Positions 11,287 through 57,464 of a DNA stretch of 64,000 nucleotides are shown here, piece by piece; position 1 is the first letter of the stretch, and every line of letters starts with the position of its first letter. A program made the translations under genes and the position numbers. Under the pieces are notes generated by a model, which was given only the letters and a program-made list of their open reading frames with translations, had not been told where the DNA came from and ran no database searches. Origin of the DNA: Macrostomum lignano (Eukaryota); NCBI GenBank assembly GCA_002269645.1, contig NIVC01000082.1, positions 186,001-250,000 of the forward strand, given 5' to 3'.

Positions 11287-12868
11287 TTGTCAAACTCTAT
11301 AGTGCAAACTGTGTCAGATTCTATAGTGCAAACTGTGTCAGATTCTATAGTGCAAACTGTGTCAGATTCTATAGTGCACACTGTGTCAGATTCTATAGTG
11401 CAAACTGTGTCAGATTCTAAAGTGCAAACTGTGTCAGATTCTATAGTGCAAACTGTGTCAGATTCTAAAGTGCAAACTGTGTCAGATTCTATAGTGCAAA
11501 CTGTGTCAGATTCTATAGTGCAAACTGTGTCAGATTCTATAGTGCAAACTGTGTCAGATTCTATAGTGCAAACTGTGTCAGATTCTAAAGTGCAAACTGT
11601 GTCAGATTCTATAGTGCAAATTGTGTCAGATTCTATAGTGCAAACTGTGTCAGATTCTATAGTGCAAACTGTGTCAGATTCTAAAGTGCAAACTGTGTCA
11701 GATTCTATAGTGCAAACTGTGTCAGATTCTATAGTGCAAACTGTGTCAGATTCTATAGTGCACACTGTGTCAGATTCTATAGTGCAAACTGTGTCAGATT
11801 CTATAGTGCAAACTGTGTCAGATTCTAAAGTGCAAACTGTGTCAGATTCTATAGTGCAAACTGTGTCAGATTCTATAGTGCAAACTGTGTCAGATTCTAT
11901 AGTGCACACTGTGTCAGATTCTATAGTGCAAACTGTGTCAGATTCTATAGTGCAAACTGTGTCAGATTCTAAAGTGCAAACTGTGTCAGATTCTATAGTG
12001 CAAACTGTGTCAGATTCTATAGTGCAAACTGTGTCAGATTCTATAGTGCAAACTGTGTCAGATTCTATAGTGCAAACTGTGTCAGATTCTATAGTGCAAA
12101 CTGTGTCAGATTCTATAGTGCAAACTGTGTCAGATTCTATAGTGCAAACTGTGTCAGATTCTAAAGTGCAAACTGTGTCAGATTCTATAGTGCAAACTGT
12201 GTCAGATTCTAAAGTGCAAACTGTGTCAGATTCTATAGTGCAAACTGTGTCAGATTCTATAGTGCAAACTGTGTCAGATTCTATAGTGCAAACTGTGTCA
12301 GATTCTATAGTGCAAATTGTGTCAGATTCTATAGTGCAAGCTGTGTCAGATTCTATAGTTCAAACTGTGTCAGATTCTATAGTGCAAACTGTGTCAGATT
12401 CTATAGTGCAAACTGTGTCAGATTCTATAGTGCAAATTGTGTCAGATTCTATAGTGCAAACTGTGTCAGATTCTATAGTGCAAACTGTGTCAGATTCTAT
12501 AGTGCAAGCTGTGTCAGATTCTATAGTGCAAACTGTGTCAGATTCTATAGTGCAAACTGTGTCAGATTCTATAGTGCAAATTGTGTCAGATTCTATAGTG
12601 CAAGCTGTGTCAGATTCTATAGTGCAAACTGTGTCAGATTCTATAGTGCAAGCTGTGTCAGATTCTATAGTGCAAACTGTGTCAGATTCTATAGTGCAAA
12701 CTGTGTCAGATTCTATAGTGCACACTGTGTCAGATTCTATAGTGCACACTGTGTCAGATTCTATAGTGCAAACTGTGTCAGATTCTATAGTGCAAACTGT
12801 CAGATTCTATAGTGCAAACTGTGTCAGATTCTATAGTGCAAACTGTCAGATTCTATAGTGCAAACTGT
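11287..12868 (+). repeat. 24-bp minisatellite ATAGTGCAAACTGTGTCAGATTCT
   Basis: Near-perfect tandem array; explains the 526-aa SDSIVQTV ORF. Confidence 0.97.
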
Positions 12869-23669: not shown

Positions 23670-26600
23670 TCAATATTTCCCGTGGCCACCGCCAGCAGCC
23701 GTGGACTTCACCAGCTGGGCAGCCAAATCGCCTGCTTCGTGCAGCCGGCGCTGCAGCTCCGAGGCCAGCGCTGGGGCGTCTTTTAACTGCTGATCAAGCT
23801 GAGTCACCGTGTCCTCTAGTTGCTATGGCAACGGTAGGGGTGAAGAGGGGTCTTGGCAGAGACAAGTAATATATATTGGTAATAATATTACGTTGTTAGG
23901 AAAGTGGTCATTCTAACCAAGTCATTTGCTTTTCAGCACCCACTTATGGCCAGATATTTTGAACTAAACAGTATCACCCTTAGGTTGCCATGGGCAAGAA
24001 AAGCAAGCTTCCTTCACGACAACGCGCGGCCGCACACCGCTAATTTGACCCGGCAAAAGCTGCTAGATCTGGGCTGGGAAGTGCTGCCCCACCCACCATA
24101 CAGCCCCGATCTGGCCCCTACAGACTATCATCTGTTTCGAGCGCTGCACCATCATTTGAAGGAAAAAACTTTCAAAGATGACAAAGATTTTGATGAGAAA
24201 ATGGAAATCTCAATAAGAGATTTGATAGTAAAAGAGATTTGATCGGAAAACAGGAAATGTCACCCTGGGAGCAAAGTATCAAGGGAAATCTAAGCCTGAG
24301 AATAAAACCTAATTGAAAGCAACATCGCGGCAAACACGATAAAATACAGTACGATAAATATGAGCAGTAATAATAACACATGCTCACCTTTATCCTAGTC
24401 TTGAGCATAAAGTTCTCCTTTTCTAACTGGGCCACTCTGGCATCGGATTCTGGCTGAAATTATTTTAATTAAAGCAAATTGTCCGAGTTAAACCTTTCTT
24501 TCACAGGAAAATCAATTACTCGTACTTTAAAAAACATTAATTAGGACGATTTAAATGTGAACAAGGAGAAGACAGGCGACAGGGGAGGAGAGGCAGACAG
24601 GGGTGGAGAAAAGAGGGAGACAGGGAGGGAGAAGAGAGGGAGACAGGGAGGGAGAAGAGAGGGAGACAGGGAGGGAGAAGAGAGGGAGACAGGGAGGGAG
24701 AAGAGAGGGAGACAGGGAGGGAGAAGAGAGGGAGACAAGGAGGGAGAAGAGAGGGAGACAGGGTAGGAGAAGAGAGGGAGACAGGGAGAGAGAAGAGAGG
24801 GAGACAGGGAGGGAGAAGAGAGGGAGACAGGGAGAGAGAAGAGAGGGAGACAGGGAGAGAGAAGAGAGGGAGACAGGGGGGGAGAAGAGAGGGAGACAGG
24901 GAGGGAGAAGAGAGGGAGACAGGGAGGGAGAAGAGAGGGAGACAGGGAGAGAGAAGAGAGGAGACAGGAAGGGAGAAGAGGGAGACAGGGAGGGAGAAGA
25001 GAGGGAGACAGGGGGGAGAAGAGAGGGAGACAGGGAGGGAGAAGAGAGGGAGACAGGGAGGGAGAAGAGAGGGAGACAGGGTGGGAGAAGAGAGGGAGAC
25101 AGGGAGGGAGAAGAGGGAGACAAGGAGGGAGAAGAGAGGGAGACAGGGAGGGAGAAGAGAGGGAGACAGGGAGGGAGAAGAGAGGGAGACAGGGAGGGAG
25201 AAGAGAGGGAGACAGGGAGGGAGAAGAGAGGGAGACAGGGTGGGAGAAGAGAGGGAGACAGGGAGGGAGAAGAGGGAGACAGGGAGGGAGAAGAGAGGGA
25301 GACAGGGTGGGAGAAGAGAGGGAGACAGGGAGGGAGAAGAGGGAGACAGGGAGGGAGAAGAGAGGGAGACAGGGTGGGAGAAGAGAGGGAGACAGGGAGG
25401 GAGAAGAGGGAGACAGGGAGGGAGAAGAGAGGGAGACAGGGTGGGAGAAGAGAGGGAGACAGGGAGGGAGAAGAGGGAGACAGGGAGGGAGAAGAGAGGG
25501 AGACAGGGTGGGAGAAGAGAGGGAGACAGGGAGGGAGAAGAGGGAGACAAGGAGGGAGAAGAGAGGGAGACAGGGAGGGAGAAGAGAGGGAGACAGGGAG
25601 GGAGAAGAGAGGGAGACAGGGAGGGAGAAGAGAGGGAGACAGGGAGGGAGAAGAGAGGGAGACAGGAAGGGAGAAGAGGGAGACAGGGAGGGAGAAGAGA
25701 GGGAGACAGGGGGGAGAAGAGAGGGAGACAGGGAGGGAGAAGAGAGGGAGACAGGGAGGGAGAAGAGAGGGAGACAGGGAGGGAGAAGAGAGGGAGACAG
25801 GGGGGAGAAGAGAGGGAGACAGGGAGGGAGAAGAGAGGGAGACAGGGTGGGAGAAGAGAGAGACAGGGAGGGAGAAGAGAGGGAGACAGGGAGGGAGAAG
25901 AGCGAGACAGGGAGGGAGAAGAGGGAGACAGGGAGGGAGAAGAGGAAGACAGGGAGGGAGAAGAGGGAGACAGGGAGGGAGAAGAGGGAGACAGGGAGGG
26001 AGAAGAGAGGGAGAAGAGGGAGACAGGGAGGGAGAAGAGAGGGAGACAGGGAGGGAGAAGAGGGTGACAGGGAGGGAGAAGAGGGACAGGGACAGGGAGG
26101 GGAAGAGAGGGAGACAGGGAGGGAGAAGAGGGTGACAGGGAGGGAGAAGAGAGGGAGAAGAGGGAGACAGGGAGGGAGAAGAGAGGCAGACAGGGAGGGA
26201 GAAGAGAGGGAGACAGGGGGGGGGGGGGCGAGAGGCAGACAGGGGAGAAGAGACAAGAAGAGAATAGAGGCACTAGATAAACCAAACACTCACAGCCCTG
26301 GCCCCAGCCCGCAGTGCCTGGTTCTCTCGCTCTAATTTCTGCATATTCAAATTAGCCTGCTGAAGCTGGGCAGCCAACCGCTCGACATCATCACTGCTGC
26401 CCAGAGAGTTTTCACCTCCACTCTGCGAGTGCTGCTGTTGCATTGGCTGCTCGTATTCTGCTGACAAACTTCCTCCGCCGCCGCCACCGAAAACTTGATG
26501 CGACGGCTGCGGCTGTTGCTTACGCAGACGGCGCGTGTGATCCAGAGCTTGACAGAACTGCTCCACGAATCTGGGGAAGAGGGCGGGTGAGAGAAATCCC

Positions 26601-36189: not shown

Positions 36190-37600
36190 GAGTGCTGAAA
36201 CTCTGTAAACTTTTCCTCTGTTGCGAAAGTCGTCGTCGCTGTCGTCACATACACATTGAGCCACTTTAAGTAGGAGTCGACGATCACCAGCAGCAGCATT
36301 CAACCTTGGACGGGACCGGCGAAATCGACGTGGACAGCGCTATTAGCAGCCATGGCTGCAGCGGAGCTTCTGGTCCGGCTCGCTGGTAGTCCGGGCAGCT
36401 CTATTGGCCTTAATGTCACGATCCAGGCCAGGCCACCATATGTAGCTTCTGGCAAGCGACTTCATCCGGGATGCTCCAGGGTGTCCGACATGCAGGCAGT
36501 CGAGCAAGCGGCTTTGGCCGACTTCAGAAATGACGACACGACTACCCCAGAGAACGCAGCCGCTTCCCGAAGGGTACCAGATCGGAAGTCCAGGAATCTC
36601 GGTCCGGCCAGGCCGAGAGACAGTACCGAACTACGCGTGTCAATGTATAGAGTCGCGGCGTGACCAGGTGCGCACGTCTAATGAAGTCACCGGCCCGGCG
36701 TCCAGGCAGTCCATCACTTGCACGACATCTGGAGGCACCGGAACTTCCTTAGGCCCCGCTGATGCAGGAAGCTGGCGGTTTAAAGCGTCTGCTCGGAGCA
36801 TGGAGACACCGCTCCGATGTACAAGACGGTACCGGTACGCGGTCAGCAGCGACGCCCATCGTTGGACTCGGTCGGAAGCCAGGGCTGGAAGCGGTCGCTC
36901 TTGTCCTAGAAGGCCGAGAAACAGCGGGTGGTCAGTCAACAGGTTGAACTCCGGACCAAACAGATAGTGATGGAATTTTTTGACACTGAAAACCAGCGCC
37001 AAGGCCTCCTTCTCCAGCTGGCAGTATTTTTCTCTGCTGAGCTGAGACAGCGCGAAGCGTACGCGATCGGCTTGTCCATGCCGTCCCGACAGTGGAATAT
37101 AACGGCGCCGAGCCCGTACTGCTATGCGTTGCACTCCAGGTAGAGCTCTTCTGCAGCGTTATAATCCACTAAGAAGCTGTGCTGTGTGAGCAGCTGCTTT
37201 GCCGCGCTGAAGGCGCCCGCCTCGCTGCGATCTCAATGCCCACCTTGAGTTCTTCTCCAACAGTCTGTGCAGCGGGGCCAGGATACTGGAAAGATTGGAC
37301 AAAAACTGGCCGTAGTAGTTGATGAGGCCCAAGAAGCTCCGCAGTTGAGTCGTGTTAGTCGGGGCAGGCGCGTCCAGCACAGCTCGAACCTTATCGTCCA
37401 GCGGGTGCAGCCCTTCGGCGTCGATGCGGTGGCCTAGGTACGTGCATGACTTCATCGCTGAAAAAGATGCATTTCTCAAGCTTGCAGTTCAGCCTGGACT
37501 CCTTGAAGACCTTCAGAACTGCTCTCAGGTTGCGGAGGTGACTGGCGTCGTCTTCTCCACACTCCTATCTCCGCAGTGTAAAAGTTTCGACGTACGATCG
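36190..37600 (-). mobile_element. Ty3/Gypsy LTR-retrotransposon pol fragment (RT thumb, RNase H, integrase start)
   Basis: YLGHRIDAEGLHP..KVRAV..APAPTNTTQLRSFLGLINYY and YCQLEKEALALVFSVKKFHHYLFG..F.LLTDH..RVQRW. Frameshifted; no LTRs recognised. Confidence 0.9.
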
Positions 37601-39075: not shown

Positions 39076-40988
39076 TCAATCGGAAATGGCGTAGGCCATG
39101 TAAGCGAAGCCGTCTGTGTCCAGACAGGTCAGATGGTCAGCGCAACCGGAGCGAGGCTCGTAGCAGGCAAAGCCAAGAAAAGGCAACGTCCTCATCAGGG
39201 TGTCTGAGAAAGTTAAATGTGCAGACAATTTTTGCAACTAAATTGGAATTCGTAAATAAATGAGTTTGGTAATTAAATAAGAATTGTTCAGCGACCATCT
39301 TAGAGGGCTGCTCAGCGATCATCTTAGAGGGCTGCTCAGCGATCATCTTAGAGGGCTGCTCAGCGACCATCTTAGAGGGCTGCTCAGCGACCATCTTAGA
39401 GGGCTGCTCAGCGACCATCTTAGAGGGCTGCTCAGCGATCATCTTAGAGGGCTGCTCAGCGATCATCTTAGAGGGCTGCTCAGCGATCATCTTAGAGGGC
39501 TGCTCAGCGATCATCTTAGAGGGCTGCTCAGCGATCATCTTAGAGGGCTGCTCAGCGATCATCTTAGAGGACTGCTCAGCGATCATCTTAGAGGGCTGCT
39601 CAGTGATCATCTTAGAGGACTGCTTAGCGACCATCAGAGGACTGCTCAGCGACCATCTTAGAAAATGATCAGTGACCATCGTAGAAGAGCTCAGAGATTA
39701 GCAACCAATCTTAGATAGCCGCCTAGCAACAAGCTTCAGACGGATGTTCAACCAAAATTTTAGTGCGTTTAATCAGCGTCAATTGAAAAAACTGTAAGCT
39801 GATCAAAAGTATTGTGAAATTAATAGTGTACTATTCGCTCCGCTCACCTTTGTCCTGCCTCTGCCGGCTAATGCCAAGCAGCACGCGTCGGCATTCCAGT
39901 TCTTCTTCGGCAAACTCCAACATATCGGTCAGTTCTCGCTTGAGACTTTCGCCAATCAGCTCAGTCTCGCCAAGGTGGAGCACCATGGCTCGGCCGGAGC
40001 CGTCCGGACTGTCGCTAACTAGATTGTAAGGCAGAGTAGGCTGTTGGTTGCTGCTTTGCTGCTCAACCGCCGACTCTGCAGCTTCCCAATCGTCATCATC
40101 GAAGGTGTTCTCATTCTCGTAATAGTCTCCAACATCGTTGTAGCCGAAATTGTCGCTGCCGATGACGAAATGAGCCAACTTATTCTGCTTCTTCTGGTCT
40201 TCTGGTCTGGTCTCCACAGTCTCATCTCGCTGCTGCTGCTGCTGCTGACTGCCCGATCTTCTGGCAGCAAACGACTGTCCGCTAACATGGGTGACAGGGG
40301 GCTGTTTTGATTCCCCCAGGCCGCTGCCCTCTGTCAACAACTCCGCGCTGTCAACTAAGGCGGCCCGGGGAGCATCAAAAACGCCACCCAGGCCCGGCAG
40401 ACGTTCGCGAGCAGAAGTTCTCTAACTCCGTGCTCCTGATGGGAGGGGGAGATTAGAATAAATAATATACCAACCATCTAATATGCAAAAAATTAACATT
40501 TGTTAGACTTTGTCGATTCATCTAAAAATGCAAAGTTATTACACTCGACTTAATAGAAATAGATCACAGCTGAATAACCGACATATGTCCCTGAATTTTT
40601 CTCCACAGCTGCAAGTCTTTGGAGTGAAGTTTAAAGTAAAAAAGCTTATTTCATTTAAGTTCGGCTATCGAAGCCATGCCCATTGGTTTTATAATTATTA
40701 ATTACTAATTAGATTTAAAGAACCAAAAGCCGAAGCCTCATAAAAATATTATTTTTGGGGAAAGAAAGCGATAAAAAATCTGAAGAAATTTTATTCTACA
40801 GTACCAATGAAGCGGCAGCAAAATTTATAATCGTAATCATAATTTAATTTATAATTAAATTCAGAGTCCAGACACTGGCAAATAATATAATTTTGGGATG
40901 TCTGATTGCAACCAACATTTACACAAGACAAAAGGTAGTGTGGCCATCTCGTTCAAAGAGTATTTTACCTTAAAGAAAGCTTCGCCAT
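39076..40988 (-). CDS. oaz: Ornithine decarboxylase antizyme, expressed through +1 programmed ribosomal frameshifting (~244 aa)
   Basis: Exon 1 40988-40969 (ATG GCG AAG CTT TCT TTA AG|gtaaaa), exon 2 40435-39848, exon 3 39203-39076. ORF1 MAKLSLRSTELENFCSRTSAGPGWRF* ends TTT TGA T at 40380-40374. The +1 ORF2 starts GAT at 40376 and contains LTDMLEFAEEELECRRVLLGISRQRQDKDTLMRTLPFLGF..FAYMAY, matching antizyme LLEFAEEQL..NREDRAALLRTFSFLGF..FMAY. Confidence 0.93.
39285..39665 (+). repeat. 24-bp minisatellite GGGCTGCTCAGCGATCATCTTAGA in antizyme intron 2
   Basis: Tandem array; explains the LLSDHLRG ORF. Confidence 0.95.
40292..40380 (-). promoter_or_regulatory. Antizyme +1 frameshift site (UUU-UGA-U) with 3' H-type RNA pseudoknot
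   Basis: Stem 1 40371-40360 UCCCCGGGCCGC pairs with 40324-40313 GCGGCCUGGGGG (12 bp, 2 G-U). Stem 2 40336-40326 UGACAGAGGGC pairs with 40302-40292 GCCCCCUGUCA (10 of 11). Loop 1 23 nt, hinge 1 nt, loop 3 10 nt. Starts 3 nt after the UGA. Confidence 0.85.
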
Positions 40989-41553: not shown

Positions 41554-42924
41554 CAAGGACTTCTAGACTAACAGGACGTAAAACTCAAAGATCGTGCAAT
41601 TTTTTAGAGGCCACGATTTCCTGGAAAAAATACACTGCGGAGATAGGAAAAAATCAGTTTTTTGTCACAAAAACAGTGATTGTATTTGATCTGGGGCAGT
41701 GAAGACTACCATTCTTTTAATTTAACATGCACAACATGTTACTCTAATATATTTTCATATAGCTGTGTATTGAAGTTTTCATTTTCATGTTGTTTTTACT
41801 TCATTTCATAAGCCCAAAGTTGCAAATACTCACAAGTGGCATTAGCCAAACTTTTTGTGCTGTTCCTTTTTTGAATCAAGTATATTTGTAATAAAACTGT
41901 GCATATAGGTACTCTTAATCTTTTATTGTATGGTTAGTAACTATACTAGGCCTACTAGTATTAGTTATACCTGTCTACTATTACTACTAGGTATAATGTC
42001 TAAGAGTTATGAGTCTAAGACCTATCAAAGATTCTTGAAAATTAGGCTTTATATATGGAATCACACATCCTTTTATTGGTAAAATAGGCCCTAACTAAAA
42101 TGACTGAATACAAGGCATGTTTGTCTTATTCATTTTCTTGCCTAATGAATAATGATATTTGATCTATGGATTCCAAAATCTTCTTAATAAGTGGGGCATA
42201 CTTACATTTACAATTTATAGGCCTAATTTATTTCAGTTTTTCAATTCTTTTAAACATGATTCTAGCTAAAGAGAAGAAAGAAGAGAGAGAAATAAAAATG
42301 GTAGTATCTATCTGTCTAAACTCTAAATCATTCATATAATAATAATATGCAATTATGATTTTTATAAATGAAGGACTTTTATTGACCTTATAGTTTAACT
42401 TATTAAATCTATACCTCCTATAGTAAATAAAAACTAATTGAGCTATTAACTATAATAGTAACTCTTATATCATATTATATATTGGAATGTATATCTAGGA
42501 ATTAAATAGTTACTAGGCCTTATATATGCATTGAAATGGAACTATATCTACAATAAAAGATTAAGAGTACCTACATGCACAGTTTTCATTACAAATATAC
42601 TTGATTCAAAAAAGGAACAGCACAAAAAGTTTGGCTAATGCCACTTGTGAGTATTTGCAACTTTGGGCTTATGAAATGAAGTAAAAACAACATGAAAATG
42701 AAAACTTCAATACACAGCTATATGAAAATATAAGAGTAACATGTTGTGCATGTTAAATTAAAAGAATGGTAGTCTTCACTGCCCCAGATCAAATAAAATC
42801 ACTGTTTTTGTGACAAAAAACTGATTTTTTCCTATCTCCACAGTGTATTTTTTCCAGGAAATCGTGGCCTCTAAAAAATTGCACGATCTTTGAGTTTTAC
42901 GTCCTGTTAGTCTAGAAGTCCTTG
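41554..42924. mobile_element. Non-autonomous DNA transposon (MITE/foldback), 1371 bp, ~376-bp TIRs, 8-bp TSD
   Basis: TIRs 41554-41930 and 42549-42924 (ends CAAGGACTTCTAGAC...GTCTAGAAGTCCTTG). Identical flanking CTTTTTCC at 41546-41553 and 42925-42932. AT-rich non-coding centre. Confidence 0.93.
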
Positions 42925-45233: not shown

Positions 45234-48200
45234 ATGCCTGCTGTAAAAGACTCCATGCGCGGACTTGCAGTCTTCATTTCTGATATCAGAAATTGTAAGA
45301 TTACACTATTCTTTTACTAATTTATTCTGTTAACTGCTTCTTAAAGTTCTCTTTTCAAAGACACAAATGATGCATAACTTAAATTTGGCAGGCAAAAGCA
45401 AGGAAGCCGAAGAGAAACGAATCAACAAAGAGCTAGCCAATATACGGTCCAAATTCAAAGGCGACAAAGCTCTAGATGGCTACCAGAAGAAGAAATATGT
45501 TTGCAAACTGCTGTTTATTTTTCTTCTGGGCAATGACATCGATTTTGGTCACATGGAGGCCGTTAATCTGCTGAATTCGAACAAGTACACTGAGAAACAG
45601 ATTGTAAGTACTGTTGGCTTGTTGTCTGTTTTATATCTAGACTATAAGTTCCTTACGTTCATCATTTATTGTCATACACTGTTCCTATGCAAGTACATTG
45701 CATTCCTAGCAACAGTTCTCGTAGGTGCTGACATGGCTAGTAGTTATTGCAACACTCTGAAATTAGGAAGTCTTTCGTAGCCATAGAAACCTCTTGGTAG
45801 CCATAGCCAAATTCGGTATAACCATAGAAACCTCTTGGTAGCCATAGCAACGCCTGGCAACCATAGAAACCTCTTCGTAGCCATATCAACATCCGGTAAC
45901 CATAGAAACCTAGTAGTAAGCAACGTCTTGTTGCCATAGAAACCTAGTAGCAGCACCGGTAACCATAGAAACCTCTTGGTAGCCATAACAACACCTGGTA
46001 ACCATTGAAACCTCTTCGTAGCCATAACAACACCTGGTAACCATAGAAACCTCTTGGCAGCCATAGTAACACCTGGTAACCATAGAAATCTCTTGGTAGC
46101 CATATCAACACCCGGTAACCGTAGAAACCTCTTGGTAGCCATAACAACACCTAGTAACCATAGAAACCTCTTGGTAGCCATAGCAACAACCATGTGGTTA
46201 TATAAGCACTTGGCAGTCATAGCGACACTTTCAATAGCAATAGCATCGCATTCTGTTAGCCATAGATAGAAGTAATGTTTGTCATGGAACACCTTGGTAG
46301 CTACGCGTATCGAGTTGCAGATAAACCGTACTCCTCACTTCCCCGACAGGGCTACCTATTCATCTCGGTACTAATCAGCGAGAACAACGAGCTCATGCGC
46401 CTGGTCCAGCAGAATCTAAAGAACGACCTGGCCTCCCGCAATCCGGTGCACGTCAACCTCGCTCTGGAGTGCATCGCCAATATTGGCAGCAAAGAGATGG
46501 CGGAAATGTTCGCCCCAGAGATTCCCAAGCTCCTAGTGATGGGAGACGCTGGCGATACTGTTAAACAGAGCGCCGCTCTGTGCCTGTTGAAGCTCTTCAG
46601 GACAGCTCCGGAGATGGTGCCGATTGGCGACTGGACATCGCGTGTTATCCACCTGCTCAACGATCAGCACATGGGCGTTGTGACCGCCGCCGTGTCTCTG
46701 ATTGAAGCTCTGGTTAAACGGAATCCGGACGATTTCAAAGGCTGCGTGTCGCTTAGTATCTCCAGGCTGGCTCGGATTGTCACTTCGTCCTATACTGACC
46801 TGCAGGTGAGACTGACTGACTGACTGACTGACTGACTGACTGACTGACTGACTGACTGACTGACTGACTGACTGACTGACTGACTGACTGACTGACTGAC
46901 TGACTGACTGACTGACTGACTGACTGACTGACTGACTGACTGACTGACTGACTGACTGACTGACTGACTGACTGACTGACTGACTGACTGACTGACTGAC
47001 TGACTGACTGACTGACTGACTGACTGACTGACTGACTGACTGACTGACTGACTGACTGACTCACTGACTGACTGACTGACTGACTGACTGACTGACTGAC
47101 TGACTGACTGACTGACTAGTAGATAGAGCGTTGGACTCATGACTGGAAGGTCGGTGGTTCGATTCTCTACCCAACTTGCAACAATTTGTGTCCTTGAGCA
47201 AGACACTTAACTCTGCACTGCTTCAGTTCAGCCAAGTATAAAAATGGGTGCCAGCATTAGCTGGGGTAGATGAGGGTGTGTGGCGCCCTCCTCCCCTGGT
47301 CCATGGACTATATAATCAATTTATAAACCAATAATAAACCCAATGCAAACCCTCAGGACTACACCTACTACTTTGTGCCGGCGCCGTGGCTATCAGTGAA
47401 GCTGCTCCGGCTGCTGCAGAACTACCCGCCGCCAGAGGACACTACGGTGCGAAATCGCCTAGCAGAGTGCCTGGAGACCATTCTTAACAAAGCGGTTGAG
47501 CCGCCTAAATCTAAGAAAGTGCAGCATTCGAACGCTAAAAATGCCGTATTATTCGAAGCGATCAGCTTGATCATTCATATGGACAGCGATCCGAGCCTTC
47601 TGGTGAGGGCCTGCAGCCAACTGGGCCAGTTTCTATCCAATAGGGAGACTAACCTGCGCTACCTGGCATTGGAGAGCATGTGCCTACTGGCCACGTCTGA
47701 GTTCTCTCACGATGCGGTTAAGAGGCACCAGGAGACTGTTGTCACGGCGCTGAAGGTGAGGCATTAACCCACAGCTTCCTGGGATTCTAATCCTAAATTT
47801 AGCATCCTAAATTGTTCGCGTTCTAAGCACTTATTAAGCCTCAATTTTGAAGTGTAAACCGTATCTCTTGTTGATTAATTATTGTAAAAACTGTATTTTA
47901 CAAATAATCAGCAAATGTTAAACAAATTAAGAAATATATATTTCGTTCTACTTACTTTGAATGGGATAAGTAGTCTGGTGCGGATACGTCAGCAAGCATC
48001 TAATAATTAATAAATTTTGCTACCATTGCCGCAATCAGAGCGAGCGCGACGTGTCAGTTCGCCAGCGCGCTGTCGATCTGCTCTACGCAATGTGCGATCG
48101 CAGCAACGCCGAAGAGATCGTCGGCGAGATGCTCACCTATTTGGAGACGGCCGATTATTCTATTCGCGGCGAATTAGTGCTCAAAATTGCCATCCTAGCC

Positions 48201-51200
48201 GAGAAATACGCCAGCGATTATACCTGGTATGTGGACACCATACTCAATCTCATTCGACTGGCTGGTGATTTCGTCTCCGAGGAGGTTTGGTACCGAGTTA
48301 TCCAGATTGTTATTAATCGCGAAGATGTGCAGGTAAGTGTTGCTTACTCGGGGTTACGTAAAGTTGGTTGCTAAGGCTCAGGTAGTTTGTTGCTAAGGCT
48401 CAGATAGTTAGTTGCTAAGGCTCAGGTAAGTGGTTGCTAGGGTCAGGTAGGCAGTTTCTAAGGCTCAGGTACTTGGTTGCTAAATGCTAAGGTCAGGTAG
48501 TTAGTTGCTAAGGCTCAGGTAGTTAGTTGCTAAGGCTCAGGTAGCTAGTTGCTAAGGCTCGGGTAGTTGGTTGCTAAGGCTTAGTGGTTGCTAAGGATCA
48601 GATAGTTGGTTGCTGAGAGTTAGGTAAATGGTTGCTAAGGTTTAGATAGTTGGTTGCTAAGGGTAAGGTAAAAGTGGTTGCTAAGGCTCAGATAGTTGGT
48701 TGCTAAGGCTCAGGTAAGTGGTTGCTAAGGCTCAGGTAAGTGGTTGCTAAGGCTCAGGTAGGCGGTTGCTAAGGGTCAGTTAGGTGGTTGGCGTGGTTGC
48801 TACGGGTCATCTAGTGGTAGTTGCTAAGGCTCAGTTAGTGTCAAATTATGACTCATGCTTCTTGATTGCAAAAGGTAATCAAGCCTAGTTGCTTGGTTGC
48901 TATGGTCTATTAGCTCTAGAATTGTGTTGCTTTGTGCCACATGGGTTTTGTTTATCCTGATCTATATTGTTACGGTTGTGAAGGTCACAGAGATTTAAGC
49001 TGGTATATGATCTTCAGTCTTCGTTGCTATGAATACGTGGCGTCTTACCCAAATCCACCAGGCGTACGCGGCCAAGACGGTATTCGAAGCGCTGGAAGCT
49101 CCGGCCTGCCACGAGAATATGGTGAAGGTTGGCGGCTACATTCTGGGCGAGTTTGGCAACCTCATTGCCGGAGATGCCCGCAGCTCGCCTTCAACTCAAT
49201 TCCAATTGCTGCACGGCAAGTTTCACCTGTGCAGTCCGCCAACCCGCGCCCTGCTGTTGAGCGCCTACATCAAATTAGTGAACCTGTTCCCGGAGATTCG
49301 CGAGGACATTATCGCTGTGCTTGAGTCTGACGCTAATCTGCGCAATTCCAATGTGGAAATTCAGCAGCGCGCTAGCGAGTATCTTAGCTTGGCTCGGAAT
49401 TCCACTCAGGTAGGTGTGGATTGATTGATTTATTAATAGATAGGTAGATAGATAATTACAAAAACGTTAACGTGTGAGCGAAGCGAGCGCGTCAACGTAA
49501 AAAGCGCTCACCCAGAGTCAGCAAACACCAAAGATTATATTAACAGATTAAATTCGAAGGTGACCAATATTTCGGCCTATTGCCTGGCCTTTGTCAGGAT
49601 TGAAAAGTAAAGTTTATAATTCGATTTAATTTAAATTGTACAGAGAAAAAATTCGAGAAAGCTAATAAATGCGAGAGATAAAAATCAGTTTGATTAGGTT
49701 TAAAAGTCCGATGGGTGCCTTGCCGCACGTCGTGCTCCTAATTGAGCAGGGTGTACAATGTAGTTGCAGTTTATTGATCTGAAAATGGGTTACGGCGTGG
49801 CAATGCTGAGTGTGCAGCTTAGACGGACAGAGAATGTCTTGAATCAAGCGCAATCTGGTGTACGCCGCCACAGTGTCAAGCTCACGTGCACGGTCTGCGA
49901 TCACCTGCGGACTCCGTGTACAAAGCGGGCAGAGTGGTCAGTGTGCGGAATCACTATGGGAATGCAAGCATGATTGGTCGTTTCAACCGTGTTTAGGCCA
50001 CTTGGGAAACGGGTGCAAAGCAGGCCGATCAATTTTTGTTCCATGTTCCTTCTACGGCGCTGGGCTCCTTTCTTGTCGGCTTTGCACTCAGTGCTCAGGT
50101 ACCATAGGCCCATGAAGCGAAGGTCATGAAGGCTGTGGTTAGCAGAGTTAAAATGTCTCGACACTGGCGTGTCTTTTCCAACCTAATGTCGCTCAGGTGG
50201 GCTTGTATTCTGACCTTGAGAGCACCACCTGTCTCCCCAATGTAGACGCAGTGGCCATTACAAGTCCTACAGAGAATCGCATAGACCACGTCTCTGGAGT
50301 CACAGCGGACTTTTTGATTGATTATGTAGACCATTTTAGTGGCATTGGAGCCTGGGCAGACCTGGCCAAACTGACCATGCTATTCACACAGGCGGCAGCT
50401 CGAATTTTTGCATCTAATAAAGCCAAATTCCCACCGGCAGTCCATGTAGTAACCCAGTTGAGTGAGAGCAGAGGTTTTTGCGTCTCGAATAGTTCGGACA
50501 GAATACCCCTGTCTTTTGAGGATGCCCAGCAGACCGCGGCGGGCATAGCGAAGGAACTGAGATTTGACAATGCCTTTAAAAGTATGCGTAGGATGAAAAG
50601 AGTCTGGGTTTAACAGTTGGCAAGAGTCTGTGGGTTTGAAGTAGATAGAGCAAGTTGGCCTCTTTTTATTGCCTTCCACTGTAAGCGATATGCAGCAGTC
50701 CAGAAAGTGAATGTTTTCTCTGCTATACTCCATCGAGATACGAATGTTGCTGTCAAAGCTGTTGAGATGGAAGTGTAACTCTTAGCTGTGCCTCCGTACC
50801 AGTAAAAATCATAAAGATGTCGTCAATGTAACGCTTGTAGAGGTGAGGGGCGAAAGGAGCGACTCTTAGGGCTCTGGACTCCCACTCAGCCATAAATATG
50901 TTGGCATAGGCGGGCGCAAAGGCCTTTCCCATACTGGTGCCTTTCACCTGTAAGAATCGGTGCTCCTCAAAGATGAAGTCATTCTGGTTCAGGTTGATGT
51001 CCAAGAGTCTCAGCTGAGTGTCAGGTCTTGATGGTTCAGGAAAATTAATAAAGGCCTTCTTCACGGCGTTCATCCCCTGGTCAGTTGGGATGTTTGTGTA
51101 CAAAGATTTGACATCCATTGTTACTAGAAAGACCTCGTTGTCCTTGTCATTAAAGCTTGTTGAATTAAAGCTTGAAAATGATCGGTGTCACGGATAAAGG

Positions 51201-54200
51201 AATCTTGTTCCTGCGCTATCGGTTGTAGAAAACAGTCAATGAATTTGTCGCTCATGTAGCTCTCTGAGCTGCAGTCGGAGACTATTGGTCTCTGGAGGCA
51301 CTCCTGGAATAGGCCACGTGTCCCTATTATTGTTGCGAAGATTTTGGAGCGCATCCTGTTGGTGTTGCTGAAGATTTGATTTGTTGTAAATGAAATTCGG
51401 AGTGCTGATACCGTCAAGAGCTTCGAAAAGATCCTCATGTGTTCTTCACTTTTCCAAGCTGAAATTGGGCAATGATGAGCGGCGAGAGAAGAACTTTCGC
51501 GGTGTGAACGCGCACGTGCGGCGTTGCAGAAGCGAATTGAGAGCGATTCTCTGCTTGAGACTAGTGATGGAATCGGTCAGGATTTGGGAGCTCATAATAG
51601 TTGGCGCGGGAACGAAATTCTTTCCCTTCTCGATCACTTTAATTTCGCTTTTTGAAAGAGTGAGGTTGACAGGTTAATCACCGGGCTGCTCTCCGCAGTT
51701 CCGGCACTGTTTAGTTTTTTGTTAGTTTAGCGAGTGCTAATTGGAGAACCCTCCTAGAGGACTCCTCAGTGAAGGAGACCAGGTTCTGTTGGAATGACAG
51801 TTCCCGAGGTGACAGAGCAACGTGTTCTTTTAGGTTGAGTCTTCGAAGATGTCGGCTAACCTTCTCAGCAGTTGTTCGGACGTCCTCTGGTTCCCCAATG
51901 TTCACCAACGAGTCAAAGGTGTAGATTTTAGCCTACGGAAAGGCTTTGCGGCAATGATTGAAGATAGTTGTCAGCTGTTTGTCGATGGCACCCTCGAACT
52001 TTCTTGATAGGTCCTGTCCCCAAGGGAACAGAATGACCGCTTTTACCCCTGTAGAGGGATCGTCGGTCTTCTCACGTAATACCTTGATCAAATTCCCTGC
52101 CCTCAAGTTCGGGAAGATCTCAAAATGGATGTCCGTATACTCCGCTTCAGTTTGAGGTAAACTCTCATCACCAATTATCACTGTCTCCTTCTCGATAGCC
52201 GAAAACTTCCAGTTCTTTTTCGGCTAATTGTGAATGTAAGACCTAGTAGTCGAGGCATTTGTTTGAGCGAGATCCGACCCAACCGCGAGAAAATTAAAAA
52301 ATATGTTGGCAAGGAGTTGGCCGTCGTCTTCGGTGTCCAGATCAGCTGCAGGTGGGGATGTCTGATCACAGACCCCCTTCGTGTCTGACACCTGAGCACA
52401 GGCAGTCAGACACCGTATTTGAGCCTTCGGCTCGCAAGATTCAGTGGTGGATCTTGGGGACGTGGAAACATCTCTGCGCCTCTCTTCGGTATGACTGAAC
52501 ATGCTTGGCTCCTCATAAAGTGTCGGTGTCGCCCAAACGGAAGACGCATCCATAGACACTGGCTCAACGGGTCCAGCCCCTTCATCAATAATCATAACAG
52601 AATTGTTAGCGTCGCGCTCAAAGGCCCCCGGAGGCTCCTCGGGGATTGAAACGAGCTCGGAAACACGGATGTCTCTGGAGTTTCTAGGTGGAAGGCTGTT
52701 CGTGGAGAAAGAACCTACCCGAAGATTCGATGAAGTCGGGGACCTCCACAGAAATTCTCAATTTGTACAGCCGGTTGCGTAGTAGGGCCGCCGAGCAGTT
52801 AAAGCGCCTTCCAGCGTCCTTCGCCGCCTAGCGCAAGCCCACCTTCCAGCCTGTGCGCAGGTCATCCGGAGCGACGTCCTGTGCCGCTTCTTCCAGCTCT
52901 TCCGACAACCTGATGATGCAAGTCTCGTAATGACTTAGCATGGTGTCCTGAGTGCTGATTTCCCAGGTTTCGGCGTTCTCCTCGATGCGCTCTGTGGTGC
53001 TTCTCGAGGGCGTCGCTATCATCGACTTTAGCTGATTGGTCTTGCTTTGAATAGATTTTGGTACTACGTCCCAACTCCCCAGGTGGCGGGCGGAGCGGAA
53101 GAGCTGCTTAGCTTGTCGAGCAACTCGGGCGGTCTCGGCTGACATAGCACCTTCAGAATTTGTAGGTTTTTGTGAGCCTTCAAAGTTTTTCAATGTTGTC
53201 TTTCTCCTGCTTTGGATCTTGTCACGGAGATCACTTCGCGACCTGTCACGATCAGAGTCCCGTCTGAAGTCAGACTGGCGGTGATCCGCATGAAACCGGA
53301 GACGCTGACGGGACCTGTCATAGATGCTGCTCGGAAGGCAGCACCGTTGTTGACCGGGGCGGTTGGCTGGTTTATATTTTGGGTATAAAAACTGTTATTT
53401 TAGCAGTAAACTTATTTTATCATAAATTTAATATTTATACACGAGCTTTGGAGGGTTGCGCTGAGCAGCGTTGAGTAAAATTTGTACATAAAATAAAAAG
53501 TTGGATTGAAGCACGCTGATTGGTTGCGGCTTTAAAGCCTTGTATGATAACAAAAATTAATGTGAGGAGCAGCTATAGAAAAACTGATTTAAATAAAAAG
53601 TGAATGACTAAGCATCTTGACTAGTACGACAAAAAGTTTTTACGAAAACACGACTGAACTTAATTTGCTAAAGAGCACTAAGAACTTTGATTGCTTAAAT
53701 AATTGTAAATAATTAAATTTAAATACATAAACAGTAGATAGATAGATAGATAGATTGAGTGATTGATTGATTAATCCGCACCTCTCATTCGTCCTTCATT
53801 TATTACCAAGGATGTACTAGCAACAGTGCTAGAAGAGATGCCGCCGTTTCCCGAACGGGAGAGCTCCATATTGGCTCAGCTGCGCAAAAAGAAGCCGGCG
53901 GTTGAAGACGCGATTCGAGCTCGCGGCGAAAAGCAGCAGCAGAGGCCGGCGTCTGGGGCCGCTGATGGGGCAGCTGCTTCCGGTAAACTATTGTTGGAAC
54001 AATAAAACTAAAATTAATTCGAAGGGGGTATGAAATGAAAAGAGGGGATCTCAAATGAGCAAATGGGATCTCAAATGAGCAAAGGGGATCTGAAATGAAG
54101 AGAGGGGATCTGAAATGAAGAGAGGGGATCTGAAATGAAGAGAGGGGATCTGAAATGAAGAGAGGGGATCTGAAATGAAGAGAGGGGATCTGAAATGAAG

Positions 54201-56583
54201 AGAGGGGATCTGAAATGAAGAGAGGGGATCTGAAATGAAGAGAGGGGATCTGAAATGAAGAGAGGGGATCTGAAATGAAGAGAGGGGATCTGAAATGAAG
54301 AGAGGGGATCTGAAATGAAGAGAGGGGATCTGAAATGAAGAGAGGGGATCTGAAATGAAGAGAGGGGATCTGATATGAAGAGAGGGGATCTGAGATGAAA
54401 AGAAGGGATCCGAAATGAAAAGAAGGGATCCGAAATGAAGAGAAGGGATCCGAAATGAAGAGAAGGTGTTCCAAATGAATTTTTCACTTTACATCCTGAT
54501 CTTCTAGCAGCGCCAACTGCGGCCACACCTACCTCTGGCGGTGGCGGCGGCGTGAAGCTTCAGGGCGACATCGCTGGCGCCGAGAGCAACACTGACTCGG
54601 ACCTGCTGGGACTCGACTTCGGTGGCAGCGCCCCGGCTGCTGCTGCGGGCGGAGGCGGCGCAGGCGGCGGCAGTGTCGACCTTCTGTCGTCGATTCTCGA
54701 CGTCGGCGTGTCGTCGTCGTCGTCATCGTCAGCAGCGCCGTCGGCGGCGTCGGGTGCGTCGGCTCAACGGAAAACGGTGGTCGTTGGAGCCGGCGCCTCT
54801 GGGTCCATTGTTGGCGAAGAGAACTGGCACAAGTTCGTGTGCAAGAATTCCGGCGTGTTGTACGAGAATGACATCCTGCAGGTTGGTTCTATGAGAATCA
54901 TGTCTGATCTAACAGCATCTCCAATCTAACAGAATCATTTCCAATCTTTCAGAATCATCTCCGATCTATCAGAATCATCTCCGATCTTTCAGACTCATCT
55001 CCGATCTTTCAGAATCATCTCCGATCTTTCAGAATCATTTCCAATCTATCAGAATCATTTCCAATCTATCAGAATCATGTCCGATCTATCAGAAGCATCT
55101 CTGATCTATCAGAATCATCTCTGATCTTTCAGAATCATTTCCAATCTATCAGAATCATTTCCAATCTATCAGAATCATTTCCAATCTATCAGAATCATTT
55201 CCAATCTATCAGAATCATGTCCGATCTATCAGAATCATTTCCAATCTATCAGAATCATTTCCAATCTATCAGAATCATGTCCGATCTATCAGAAGCATCT
55301 CTGATCTATCAGAATCATCTCCGATCTTTCAGAATCATCTCCGATCTTTCAGAATCATCTCCGATCTTTCAGAATCATCTCCAATCTATCAGAATCATTT
55401 CCAATCTATCAGAATCATTTCCAATCTATCAGAATCATTTCCAATCTATCAGAATCATTTCCAATCTATCAGAATCATTTCCAATCTATCAGAATCATTT
55501 CCAATCTATCAGAATCATTTCCAATCTATCAGAATCATTTCCAATCTATCAGAATCATGTCCGATCTATCAGAAGCATCTCTGATCTATCAGAATCATCT
55601 CCGATCTTTCAGAATCATCTCCGATCTATCAGAATCATCTCCAATCTATCAGAATCATCTCCAATCTATCAGAATCATCTCCAATCTATCAGAATCATCT
55701 CCAATCTATCAGAATCATTTCCTATCTATCAGAATCATCTCCGATCTATCAGAATCATCTCCAATCTATCAGAATCATTTCCTATCTATCAGAATCATCT
55801 CCGATCTATCAGAATCATCTCCAATCTATCATAATCATCTCCGATCTTTCAGAATCATCTCCGATCTATCAAAATCATTTCCAATCTATCATAATCATTT
55901 CCAATCTATCATAATCATTTCCAATCTATCATAATCATTTCCAATCTATCATAATCATCTCTGATCTATCAGAATCATCTCCGATCTATCAGAATCATCT
56001 CCAATCTATCAGAATCTTTTCCAATCTATCAGAATCTTTTCCAATCTATCATAATCATTTCCAATCTATCATAATCATTTCCAATCTATCAGAATCATCT
56101 CCGATCTATCAGAATCATCTCCGATCTATCAGAATCATCTCTGATTAAAGAAGATCATTTTTAAGTTTTGCGAATGACTCCCGTCTTTTAGAGTCACAGC
56201 CGATGTTAGAGTCATTTTAATACTTTTATTTTTGTCGAATGTGTTTAAATCACTTTTTTGTCGAATTCGGCCTTCGCTCCCAAGCAATGCCCGCCCATCT
56301 CCTGCCTGCCCAGGTTGGCGTCAAATGCGACTACCAGCAGAGCAGTGGTCGCATTGTGGTTTACTACGGCAACAAGACACCGGCACCGCTGGCCCAGTTT
56401 GCCAGCGTCATCAACCTGCCCGACTCCAGCCTCACCAATCAGCTGGGCATCCAGGTGAAGCCAGTCGGCGATCGGGTTGGCGCCTCCGAGCAAGTCAACG
56501 AAGTCATCACCGTCGACTGCATGGCCGAGTTCTCCGCCTGTCCGCTGCTCAACATCCGCTTTGTGTGAGTGCCAGACAGACAC

Positions 56584-56682
<99 letters not shown>

Positions 56683-56683
56683 C

Positions 56684-56716
<33 letters not shown>

Positions 56717-56795
56717 AAGACACACGGACAGACACACAGACAGACACACAGACAGACAGACAGACACACAGACAGACAGACAGACAGACAGACAC

Positions 56796-56858
<63 letters not shown>

Positions 56859-57139
56859 CACAGACAGACAGACAGACACACGGACAGACAGACACACAGA
56901 CAGACAGACAGACACACGGACAGACACACAGACAGACACACAGACAGACAGACAGACAGACAGACACACAGACAGACAGAAAGACACACGGACAGACACA
57001 CAGACAGACACACAGACAGACAGACAGACAGACAGACACACAGACAGACAGACACACAGACAGACAGACACACAGACAGACAGACAGACAGACACACAGA
57101 CAGACAGACAGACACACGGACAGACACACAGACAGACAC

Positions 57140-57176
<37 letters not shown>

Positions 57177-57423
57177 AAGACACACGGACAGACACACAGG
57201 CAGACACACAGACAGACAGACAGACAGACAGACACACAGACAGACAGACAGACACACAGACAGACAGACAGACAGACAGACAAAAAGACACACGGACAGA
57301 CACACAGACAGACACACAGACACACAGACAGACACACAGACAGACAGACACACAGACAGACAGACAGACAGACAAAAAGACACACGGACAGACACACAGA
57401 CAGACACACAGACAGACAGACAC

Positions 57424-57464
<41 letters not shown>

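What the first reader, a model, noticed from the sequence alone, without database searches (positions are those of the whole stretch)
39076..40988. Hidden antizyme gene with a UUU-UGA-U +1 programmed frameshift
Seen: a 20-nt first coding exon spliced to exon 2 gives a 26-codon ORF1 ending GGG CCT GGG TGG CGT TTT TGA T. The +1 frame (GAT GCT CCC...) stays open through the intron into exon 3 and encodes the antizyme core. Established: antizymes are made by polyamine-stimulated +1 frameshifting, at UCC-UGA in vertebrates and UUU-UGA in many invertebrates. Inference: this is a polyamine-sensing recoding gene that ORF-based annotation would truncate or split. The frame break is a functional signal, not an assembly error.
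Basis: partly seen in the sequence, partly recalled or inferred. Interest (0 to 1): 0.8.

Follow-up and report, generated by a model that had tools for sequence, protein, structure and literature searches.

The report
Flatworm antizyme gene with +1 frameshift
This is the ornithine decarboxylase antizyme gene of the flatworm Macrostomum lignano, which needs a programmed +1 ribosomal frameshift at UUU-UGA; the reading is correct, but this species' UUU-UGA site was already published in 2007, so only the database gene models need correcting.

Summary
On the minus strand, ATG 40988 opens a 20-nt exon with a GT donor. Exon 2 (40435-39848) carries a 26-codon ORF1 that ends TTT TGA T at 40380-40374. 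The +1 frame runs on through exon 3 (39203-39076). The joined 244-aa product hits Pfam ODC_AZ (51 bits, cut-off 24.2) and human and rat antizyme 1 structures.

The window is 100% identical to Macrostomum lignano scaffold NIVC01000082.1. Two further genomic copies keep the same TTTTTGAT. Exons differ about five times less than introns between copies.

The site sits between a conserved 5' motif and a two-stem 3' pseudoknot. Its architecture fits the published invertebrate "class II" type. All 20 pairs hold in four sequences, and four pairs show compensatory changes.

Ivanov & Atkins (2007, PMC1874602) already name M. lignano as a flatworm with a UUU-UGA antizyme site, so the biology is known.

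Public gene models are indeed truncated: GenBank has an 88-aa "hypothetical protein", and UniProt a 233-aa ORF2-frame fragment.

Exon 1 and its junction have no cDNA support here; it is only the best of 89 mechanical candidates.

Side note: related transcripts from an unidentified species use CUU-UGA, which the 2007 review said no natural antizyme used.

The parts
40969..40988 (-). Proposed coding exon 1: ATG plus 17 nt (MAKLSL + 2 nt), donor AAG|GTAAAA, Kozak-like CCAAACATGG. This is a prediction only.
   Evidence: Sequence. It ranks first of 89 mechanically possible ATG-plus-GT-donor exons in the 5.5 kb upstream, by a crude donor and Kozak score. It is identical in all three genomic copies, but 20 nt is too short to be informative. 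No cDNA evidence was obtained.
40436..40968 (-). Intron 1 (533 nt, GT...AG)
   Evidence: It differs from copy L009 at 19 of 533 aligned bases plus 23 gap columns, against 0 differences in the first 278 nt of exon 2.
39848..40435 (-). Exon 2: end of ORF1, the frameshift cassette, and most of ORF2
   Evidence: The zero frame has no ATG in this exon. Read contiguously into the intron, it meets a TAA at 40455-40453, so an upstream exon must supply the start codon.
40381..40398 (-). 5' conserved motif GCCGGGCCUGGGUGGCGU directly upstream of the shift codon. It corresponds to the 5' stimulatory modules A/B described for antizyme mRNAs.
   Evidence: The alignment with four related transcript types shows invariant G..GGGCC...G..G.GU. 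The 2007 review describes UGG-UGC-UCC-UGA as the deeply conserved core. Assigning this motif to modules A/B is an inference.
40374..40380 (-). Shift site UUU-UGA-U. P-site Phe codon UUU is 40380-40378, ORF1 stop UGA is 40377-40375, and the new-frame codon GAU starts at 40376.
   Evidence: The run of five T lets tRNA-Phe re-pair perfectly on UUU after a +1 slip (read directly from the sequence). The same heptamer is in copies L007 and L009.
40293..40370 (-). 3' pseudoknot. Stem 1 is CCCCGGGCCGC (40370-40360) with GCGGCCUGGGG (40324-40314). Loop 1 is 24 nt. Stem 2 is GACAG-A-GGGC (40335-40326) with GCCC-C-CUGUC (40302-40293). The hinge is a single A (40325). Loop 3 is A-rich, GAAUCAAAACA (40313-40303).
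   Evidence: All 20 pairs are standard pairs in all 4 distinct sequences. Four pairs show changes on both sides. Slid controls give 39-58% paired. A nested fold of the region gives -49.5 kcal/mol, z = -4.3. The architecture (long loop 1, one-nucleotide hinge, start 4 nt after UGA) fits the class IIa description in PMC1874602.
39204..39847 (-). Intron 2 (644 nt, GTGAGC...CTCAG). It contains a 24-nt minisatellite at 39288-39662.
   Evidence: The junction is used by both public protein models (P0003, P0005). It falls inside an uninterrupted alignment to human and rat antizyme 1.
39076..39203 (-). Exon 3: C-terminal 42 codons of the antizyme plus stop TGA (39078-39076)

Best explanation
This is one of three near-identical genomic copies of the Macrostomum lignano ornithine decarboxylase antizyme gene.

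Proposed mechanism:
- Ribosomes start at a short ORF1, most likely the ATG at 40988 in a 20-nt exon.
- They reach UUU-UGA-U at 40380-40374.
- There they either terminate, giving a 26-residue peptide, or slip +1. In the slip, P-site tRNA-Phe re-pairs on the overlapping UUU, GAU is read next, and ORF2 is translated. The full product is 244 aa with a C-terminal ODC_AZ domain.
- A conserved 5' motif and a two-stem 3' pseudoknot starting 4 nt after UGA promote the slip.

By analogy with studied antizymes, free polyamines raise the shift frequency. The product then binds ornithine decarboxylase monomers and sends them to the proteasome, closing a negative feedback loop.

Shown here: the gene structure for exons 2 and 3, family membership, the frame break and its conservation, and pairing and covariation in the pseudoknot.

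Inferred: exon 1, polyamine dependence, and ODC targeting.
For: - Pfam ODC_AZ 51 bits against a cut-off of 24.2, covering residues 152-241 across the exon 2/3 junction.
- Match to rat (1ZO0) and human (4ZGY, 5BWA) antizyme 1, with LEFAEE.L conserved.
- ORF2 is identical to UniProt A0A1I8HV15, 'Ornithine decarboxylase antizyme', M. lignano.
- The window is 100% identical over 12.9 kb to NIVC01000082.1 of GCA_002269645.1.
- All three genomic copies keep TTTTTGAT.
- Exons carry 5 differences in 736 nt against 38 in 1177 nt for introns (Fisher p = 1e-4).
- RNA-derived contigs of relatives have an ORF1 stop at the homologous position, with ORF2 in +1.
- Pseudoknot pairing is 100%, with four compensatory pairs.
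- Ivanov & Atkins 2007 list M. lignano with UUU-UGA and place class II pseudoknots in Platyhelminthes.
Against: - No M. lignano cDNA or ribosome-profiling data were reachable, so retention of the five T in mRNA and the exon 1/2 junction are not shown directly for this locus.
- The covariation test rests on only four distinct sequences, three of them close in this region. The structure was also derived from one of them, which inflates the slid-control contrast.
- The Pfam match misses the first 23 model positions, and the domain is shorter than in relatives.
- No Rfam family matches. I saw no invertebrate pseudoknot family among the hits, so this result does not bear on class II.
Confidence: 0.93

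Rival explanations
1. The frameshift gene is real, but ORF1 starts elsewhere. The true first exon would be a different upstream exon, or exon 1 would carry additional 5' exons or a trans-spliced leader, rather than the mRNA simply beginning near 40988.
For: No transcript evidence was obtained for exon 1. There are 89 mechanically possible ATG-plus-donor exons in the 5.5 kb upstream. About 30% of M. lignano genes are SL trans-spliced (PMC8629364). ORF1 N-termini of relatives (MSISIIGNN...) do not resemble MAKLSL.
Against: The proposed exon has the best combined donor (AAG|GTAAAA) and Kozak (A at -3, G at +4) score of all 89 candidates, and it is the closest good one. Joining the published SL (which ends ...TTGCATG) directly to the exon 2 acceptor puts its AUG in the third frame. 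That frame stops at TAG after 27 codons and never reaches UUU-UGA in frame, so an SL-donated AUG at this acceptor cannot serve (worked out).
Confidence: 0.3
2. There is no recoding. The protein is made from the internal ATG at 39986, the 88-aa product in GenBank, and the upstream ORF2-frame sequence is untranslated.
For: GenBank models PAA65606.1, PAA91652.1 and PAA91617.1 are annotated this way. The 88 aa contain most of the Pfam-matching segment.
Against: The ORF2 frame is open for about 146 codons upstream of that ATG without any ATG. That stretch carries only 5 substitutions between copies, against about 3% divergence in introns. ORF1 ending in X-UGA with ORF2 in +1 is conserved in relatives that differ strongly in protein sequence. 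The model looks like an artefact of an ATG-to-stop gene caller.
Confidence: 0.03
3. The frame break is an assembly error in a T homopolymer of a long-read assembly, or a pseudogene lesion.
For: The break lies in a run of five T, the kind of place where long-read assemblies make indel errors (general knowledge).
Against: Three separately assembled copies agree, one of them 3-4% diverged in its introns. Removing or adding a T would not give a plausible single ORF with a conserved N-terminus. Relatives' RNA contigs from at least six runs show the same two-ORF layout. The 2007 review reported UUU-UGA for this species ten years before this assembly. Exons are under purifying selection.
Confidence: 0.02

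Closest known systems
Macrostomum lignano antizyme as catalogued by Ivanov & Atkins, Nucleic Acids Res 2007 (PMC1874602)
   Same: Same species, same gene family and same UUU-UGA shift site. The phylum is listed among those with a class II 3' pseudoknot.
   Different: The published ORF1 could therefore not be compared with the exon 1 proposed here. The genomic exon-intron structure and the three-copy state come from this analysis.
Invertebrate class IIa antizyme pseudoknot (oyster Crassostrea gigas type; Ivanov et al., J Mol Biol 2004, as summarised in PMC1874602)
   Same: Two stems, a long loop 1 (24 nt here, over 35 nt in L012), and a single-nucleotide hinge between stems. A GC-rich stem 1 starts a few nucleotides after UGA, and the 5' modules co-occur with it.
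   Different: The oyster has UCC-UGA; here the P-site codon is UUU. The oyster sequence itself was not available (PMC7125782 not held). Identity of stem 1 sequence with the class II consensus could therefore not be checked directly. It was checked only against an unidentified UCC-UGA relative (L012).
Mammalian antizyme 1 (OAZ1; PDB 4ZGY, 5BWA, 1ZO0)
   Same: The C-terminal ODC-binding domain is alignable, including LEFAEE.L. Both have the two-ORF +1 design with a UGA stop.
   Different: The mammalian site is UCC-UGA with a compact class I pseudoknot. There is no significant match to any Rfam family here. The N-terminal half of the flatworm protein (Q-rich and acidic) is unrelated.
C. elegans-clade nematode antizymes (UUU-UGA)
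   Same: Same P-site codon and stop.
   Different: According to PMC1874602 these lack module B and carry a distinct module E. The flatworm cassette instead resembles the class II / module A+B type. UUU-UGA was judged there to have arisen independently in several lineages.

Membership tests
Ornithine decarboxylase antizyme (Pfam PF02100, ODC_AZ) | Protein domain scores above the curated family threshold | tested here: met
   51 bits against a cut-off of 24.2, E = 1.6e-13, residues 152-241 on model positions 24-113 of 114. PDB antizyme 1 hits at E about 3e-5.
Ornithine decarboxylase antizyme (recoded gene architecture) | A short ORF1 with the initiator; ORF2 in the +1 frame, overlapping ORF1, without its own upstream initiator and encoding the conserved domain | tested here: met
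   ORF1 has 26 codons. The ORF2 frame is open from TAG 40424-40422 and has no ATG before 39986. The ORF1 initiator exon is predicted, not verified.
Ornithine decarboxylase antizyme (recoded gene architecture) | Shift site is the last sense codon of ORF1 plus a UGA stop, with a P-site codon from the known natural set | tested here: met
   UUU-UGA-U at 40380-40374. UUU is listed for Platyhelminthes, naming M. lignano.
Ornithine decarboxylase antizyme (recoded gene architecture) | Frame break conserved in relatives and in paralogous copies, not a lesion | tested here: met
   Three genomic copies are identical in the cassette. Relatives have CUU-UGA, AUU-UGA or UCC-UGA at the homologous position.
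Ornithine decarboxylase antizyme (function) | Frameshift efficiency rises with polyamine concentration | not testable with these tools
   Needs a reporter assay or ribosome profiling with and without spermidine.
Ornithine decarboxylase antizyme (function) | Binds ODC and targets it for ubiquitin-independent degradation | not testable with these tools
   Only indirect evidence: the acidic helix LEFAEEEL aligns with LEFAEEQL of human and rat antizyme 1. That this helix contacts ODC is recalled from the literature, not tested.
Class II (IIa) invertebrate antizyme 3' pseudoknot | Two-stem H-type pseudoknot 3' of UGA with a long loop 1 and a one-nucleotide hinge | tested here: met
   Stem 1 has 11 bp and stem 2 has 5+4 bp around an A.C mismatch. 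Loop 1 is 24 nt and the hinge is a single A. 100% of 80 cells are paired. The description is from PMC1874602.
Class II (IIa) invertebrate antizyme 3' pseudoknot | Both stems supported by compensatory changes | tested here: inconclusive
   Two pairs in each stem change on both sides, and 10 of 500 shuffles reach this. There are only four distinct sequences, and the structure was drawn from one of them.
Class II (IIa) invertebrate antizyme 3' pseudoknot | Stem 1 sequence close to the published class II consensus | not tested
   The reference sequences (J Mol Biol 2004; 2007 supplement) were not held.
Class I vertebrate antizyme pseudoknot | Match to a curated Rfam antizyme frameshift-element model | tested here: not met
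   No Rfam family at gathering score in the window. Only chance-level hits (E above 4) in 40150-40500.

The most novel reading that the evidence does not exclude
Two readings go beyond what is known, and neither is excluded.

(1) In M. lignano the shift site UUUUGAU can pair over 7 bp with AUCAAAA in pseudoknot loop 3. This would extend stem 1 into a long nested hairpin that competes with stem 2, giving a possible conformational switch that tunes shifting.

(2) The flatworm-like relatives show turnover of the P-site codon (UUU, CUU, AUU, UCC) on an otherwise fixed 5'-motif and pseudoknot chassis. This includes a natural CUU-UGA site, which is the bacterial RF2 shift site.

The probability below refers to reading (1) being functional.
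Probability: 0.07. Interest if true: 0.4.

Novelty: already known. Interest (0 to 1): 0.12.

Why it matters
Biologically this adds nothing new. Antizyme +1 frameshifting is a textbook recoding case, and this species' UUU-UGA site was catalogued in 2007.

The practical value is in annotation. All three M. lignano copies in GCA_002269645.1 are recorded as 88-aa 'hypothetical proteins', and UniProt holds ORF2-frame fragments. The gene models should be replaced by a joined, frameshifted CDS of 244 aa.

The analysis also gives window-level coordinates for the shift site, the 5' motif and the pseudoknot in a genetically tractable flatworm model. These could serve as a polyamine-responsive reporter cassette.

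Tried and rejected
1. Rfam scans of the whole window (gathering threshold) and of 40150-40500 (E up to 10) gave no antizyme element, only chance hits.
2. Looking for M. lignano cDNA. Look-ups of the genomic exon 2 ORF, with two start variants, found nothing. The 90% cluster of the protein holds only UniProt and GenBank models.
3. The 2007 review's supplement and the 2004 pseudoknot paper are not held. The published M. lignano ORF1 and the oyster reference pseudoknot could not be compared.
4. Using paralogue conservation to validate exon 1 failed. The copies are too similar, and exon 1 at 20 nt has 0 differences, which is uninformative.
5. An SL-donated AUG at the exon 2 acceptor gives the wrong frame and was rejected.
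6. Identifying the species behind L001-L006, L010 and L011 failed. No paper in the library cites the run accessions, and no named relatives were found.
7. The long ORFs elsewhere in the window are mostly translations of minisatellites, not genes.

Full report
**1. The observation**

- ATG at 40988 opens a 20-nt exon, ATGGCGAAGCTTTCTTTAAG, followed by GTAAAA.
- Intron 1 ends CCCATCAG at 40436.
- Exon 2 runs 40435-39848 and is followed by GTGAGC.
- Intron 2 ends TTCTCAG at 39204.
- Exon 3 runs 39203-39076 and ends in TGA.

Spliced this way, ORF1 has 26 codons (MAKLSLRSTELENFCSRTSAGPGWRF) and stops in ...TGG CGT TTT TGA T. TTTTGAT lies at 40380-40374.

The +1 frame is open from a TAG at 40424-40422 through the rest of exon 2, about 191 codons, and stays in phase into exon 3. 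It has no ATG before 39986.

The zero frame has no ATG in exon 2. Read contiguously into intron 1, it meets a TAA at 40455-40453. An upstream exon must therefore supply the initiator.

**2. What the protein is**

Joining ORF1 to ORF2 by skipping the U of UGA gives a 244-aa protein.
- It hits Pfam ODC_AZ (PF02100) at 51 bits against a curated cut-off of 24.2. E is 1.6e-13, over residues 152-241.
- It matches rat and human antizyme 1 chains 1ZO0, 4ZGY, 4ZGZ and 5BWA (E about 3e-5). The alignment runs without a break across the exon 2/3 junction and keeps LEFAEE.L.

**3. Where the window comes from and what is annotated**

The nearest database protein is 'Ornithine decarboxylase antizyme' of Macrostomum lignano.

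Its cluster contains:
- UniProt A0A1I8HV15, 233 aa. It starts RTSARERLPG..., which is the ORF2 frame taken from just after the TAG stop, with no Met. It is identical to the window's ORF2, including the exon 2/3 junction.
- GenBank PAA65606.1/PAA91652.1 and PAA91617.1. These are 88-aa 'hypothetical proteins' that start at the internal ATG at 39986.

Fetching their loci and comparing them shows that the window is 100% identical over 12,911 bases to NIVC01000082.1 of assembly GCA_002269645.1. Two further copies exist: NIVC01001635.1 at 99.2% identity and NIVC01000083.1 at about 96-97%. This fits the polyploid genome described for this species (PMC10468722 abstract).

**4. Is the frame break real?**

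- All three genomic copies carry the same TTTTTGAT, and the whole cassette is identical.
- Between the window copy and the most diverged copy, exons differ at 5 of 736 positions (2 synonymous, 3 not). Introns differ at 38 of 1177 aligned positions, plus large indels. Fisher p is 1e-4. The reading frames are thus under constraint.
- RNA-derived contigs of relatives show the same layout: a short ORF1 from an ATG, a UGA stop, and the antizyme frame in +1.
  - L001-L006 and L011: ...UGG UGU CUU UGA G
  - L010: ...CUG UGU AUU UGA A
  - L012/L013: ...UGG UGU UCC UGA U
[quoted passage not shown] That report predates this assembly by ten years and is independent of it.

Assembly error and pseudogene readings are therefore very unlikely.

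**5. Signals around the site**

5' side. The 18 nt before UUU (GCCGGGCCUGGGUGGCGU, 40398-40381) align with GC(U/C)GGGCC...(G/C)UG(G/U)G. in all relatives. They contain the UGG-NGN core that the review calls deeply conserved (UGG-UGC-UCC-UGA in human and S. pombe).

3' side. Four nucleotides after UGA a two-stem pseudoknot can form.
- Stem 1: CCCCGGGCCGC (40370-40360) with GCGGCCUGGGG (40324-40314).
- Loop 1: 24 nt.
- Stem 2: GACAG-A-GGGC (40335-40326) with GCCC-C-CUGUC (40302-40293).
- Hinge: a single A.
- Loop 3: 11 nt, A-rich.

On an alignment of the four distinct sequences, all 80 cells of the 20 pairs are standard pairs. Two pairs in each stem change on both sides (for example G-C to A-U in stem 1; A-U to G-C and C-G to A-U in stem 2). 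Sliding the partners by 1-3 columns drops pairing to 39-58%.

Caveats: there are only four sequences, three of them similar here, and the structure was read off one of them.

The long loop 1 and the one-nucleotide hinge fit the 'class IIa' invertebrate pseudoknot. The review says this type occurs in Platyhelminthes and co-occurs with 5' modules A and B. No Rfam family matches.

**6. Mechanism**

Zero-frame codons are CGU UUU UGA. With tRNA-Phe on UUU in the P site and the slowly decoded UGA in the A site, a +1 slip puts the tRNA on the overlapping UUU with perfect pairing. GAU (Asp) is then read, giving ...GWRF-DAPRA... This follows directly from the sequence.

Three further steps are inferred from what is established for antizymes and were not tested here. 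They are that polyamines raise the slip frequency, that the 5' motif and the pseudoknot stimulate it, and that the product inactivates ODC.

**7. Exon 1**

This is the weakest part of the finding. No M. lignano transcript could be reached.

A mechanical enumeration of every ATG followed in the right phase by a GT, without an intervening stop, in the 5.5 kb upstream gives 89 candidates.

M. lignano trans-splices about 30% of its genes to a leader that ends ...TTGCATG (PMC8629364). Joined to the exon 2 acceptor, that AUG falls in the third frame and stops after 27 codons. It cannot start ORF1 there.

I put about 0.6-0.7 on exon 1 being as proposed. The frameshift conclusion does not depend on it.

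**8. Comparison and novelty**

The gene passes every membership test for the antizyme family that could be run here: domain, two-ORF layout, shift site, and conservation of the break. Polyamine response and ODC targeting are untestable with these tools.

It works like other antizymes with class II pseudoknots, and it is the very case listed in the 2007 survey. Novelty is therefore 'already known'. The useful output is a corrected gene model and coordinates for the signals.

**9. Seen in passing**

- CUU-UGA-G in the antizyme transcripts L001-L006 and L011. [quoted passage not shown] A full-text search found no later mention.
- A 7-bp complementarity between the shift site and loop 3 in M. lignano, poorly conserved in relatives.
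- The window's neighbours and its very high minisatellite load.

Noticed in passing
L001:52-175 (also L002-L006 and L011:50-173): Antizyme transcripts of an unidentified relative have a 39-codon ORF1 (MSISIIGNN...GAGPLWCL) ending CUU-UGA-G. The sources are Logan runs SRR3745356, SRR3745347, SRR26183987/90/93 and SRR26184003, plus ENA ERZ3792527. The 5' motif and pseudoknot match those of M. lignano. The 2007 antizyme survey states that CUU-UGA, the bacterial RF2 shift site, occurs in no known natural antizyme. No later mention was found in the paper library.
   Followed up: partly
L010:51-174; L012:1-184: Two more relatives share the same cassette but have other P-site codons. L010 (SRR14039982) has AUU-UGA-A, the site reported for planarians and trematodes. 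L012/L013 (JGI 3300030852 and 3300031128) have UCC-UGA-U with a loop 1 longer than 35 nt. The P-site codon therefore turns over on a conserved stimulator chassis.
   Followed up: partly
window 40305-40380 (- strand): The shift site UUUUGAU (40380-40374) is complementary over 7 bp to AUCAAAA (40311-40305) in pseudoknot loop 3. The minimum-energy nested fold therefore sequesters the shift site (-49.5 kcal/mol, z = -4.3). Relatives keep only 0-4 of these pairs, so this is probably incidental to an A-rich loop facing a U-rich site.
   Followed up: partly
window 39288-39662 (intron 2): A 24-nt minisatellite (about 15.7 copies, 95% matches) fills most of intron 2. The copy on NIVC01000083.1 has an intron 389 nt longer at this array.
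   Followed up: partly
window 41554-41930 and 42549-42924: A pair of inverted repeats about 375 bp long and 98-99% complementary, whose innermost reported arm ends (41896 and 42584) lie 687 bp apart. It lies about 0.6 kb upstream of the proposed exon 1. It looks like a foldback or MITE-like element and is present in copies L007 and L008.
   Followed up: no
window 45367-47767 and onward (+ strand): Exons of an adaptin gene with Pfam Adaptin_N, annotated in GenBank as a 985-aa product with alpha-adaptin C-terminal domains. It is transcribed divergently from the antizyme gene, about 4.4 kb away. The same neighbour flanks all three antizyme copies.
   Followed up: partly
window 36640-37134 (- strand): An ORF with a reverse-transcriptase RNase H-like domain (PF17917, E = 4e-13). 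It is probably a retroelement remnant downstream of the antizyme gene.
   Followed up: no
window 741-26222, 45777-58755: The window has an exceptionally dense set of minisatellite arrays with periods of 12-39 nt and lengths up to 1.6 kb. Examples are 4361-5974, 11288-12868 and the purine-rich 24581-26222. They create most of the long mechanical ORFs and the extreme GC and AT skews.
   Followed up: no
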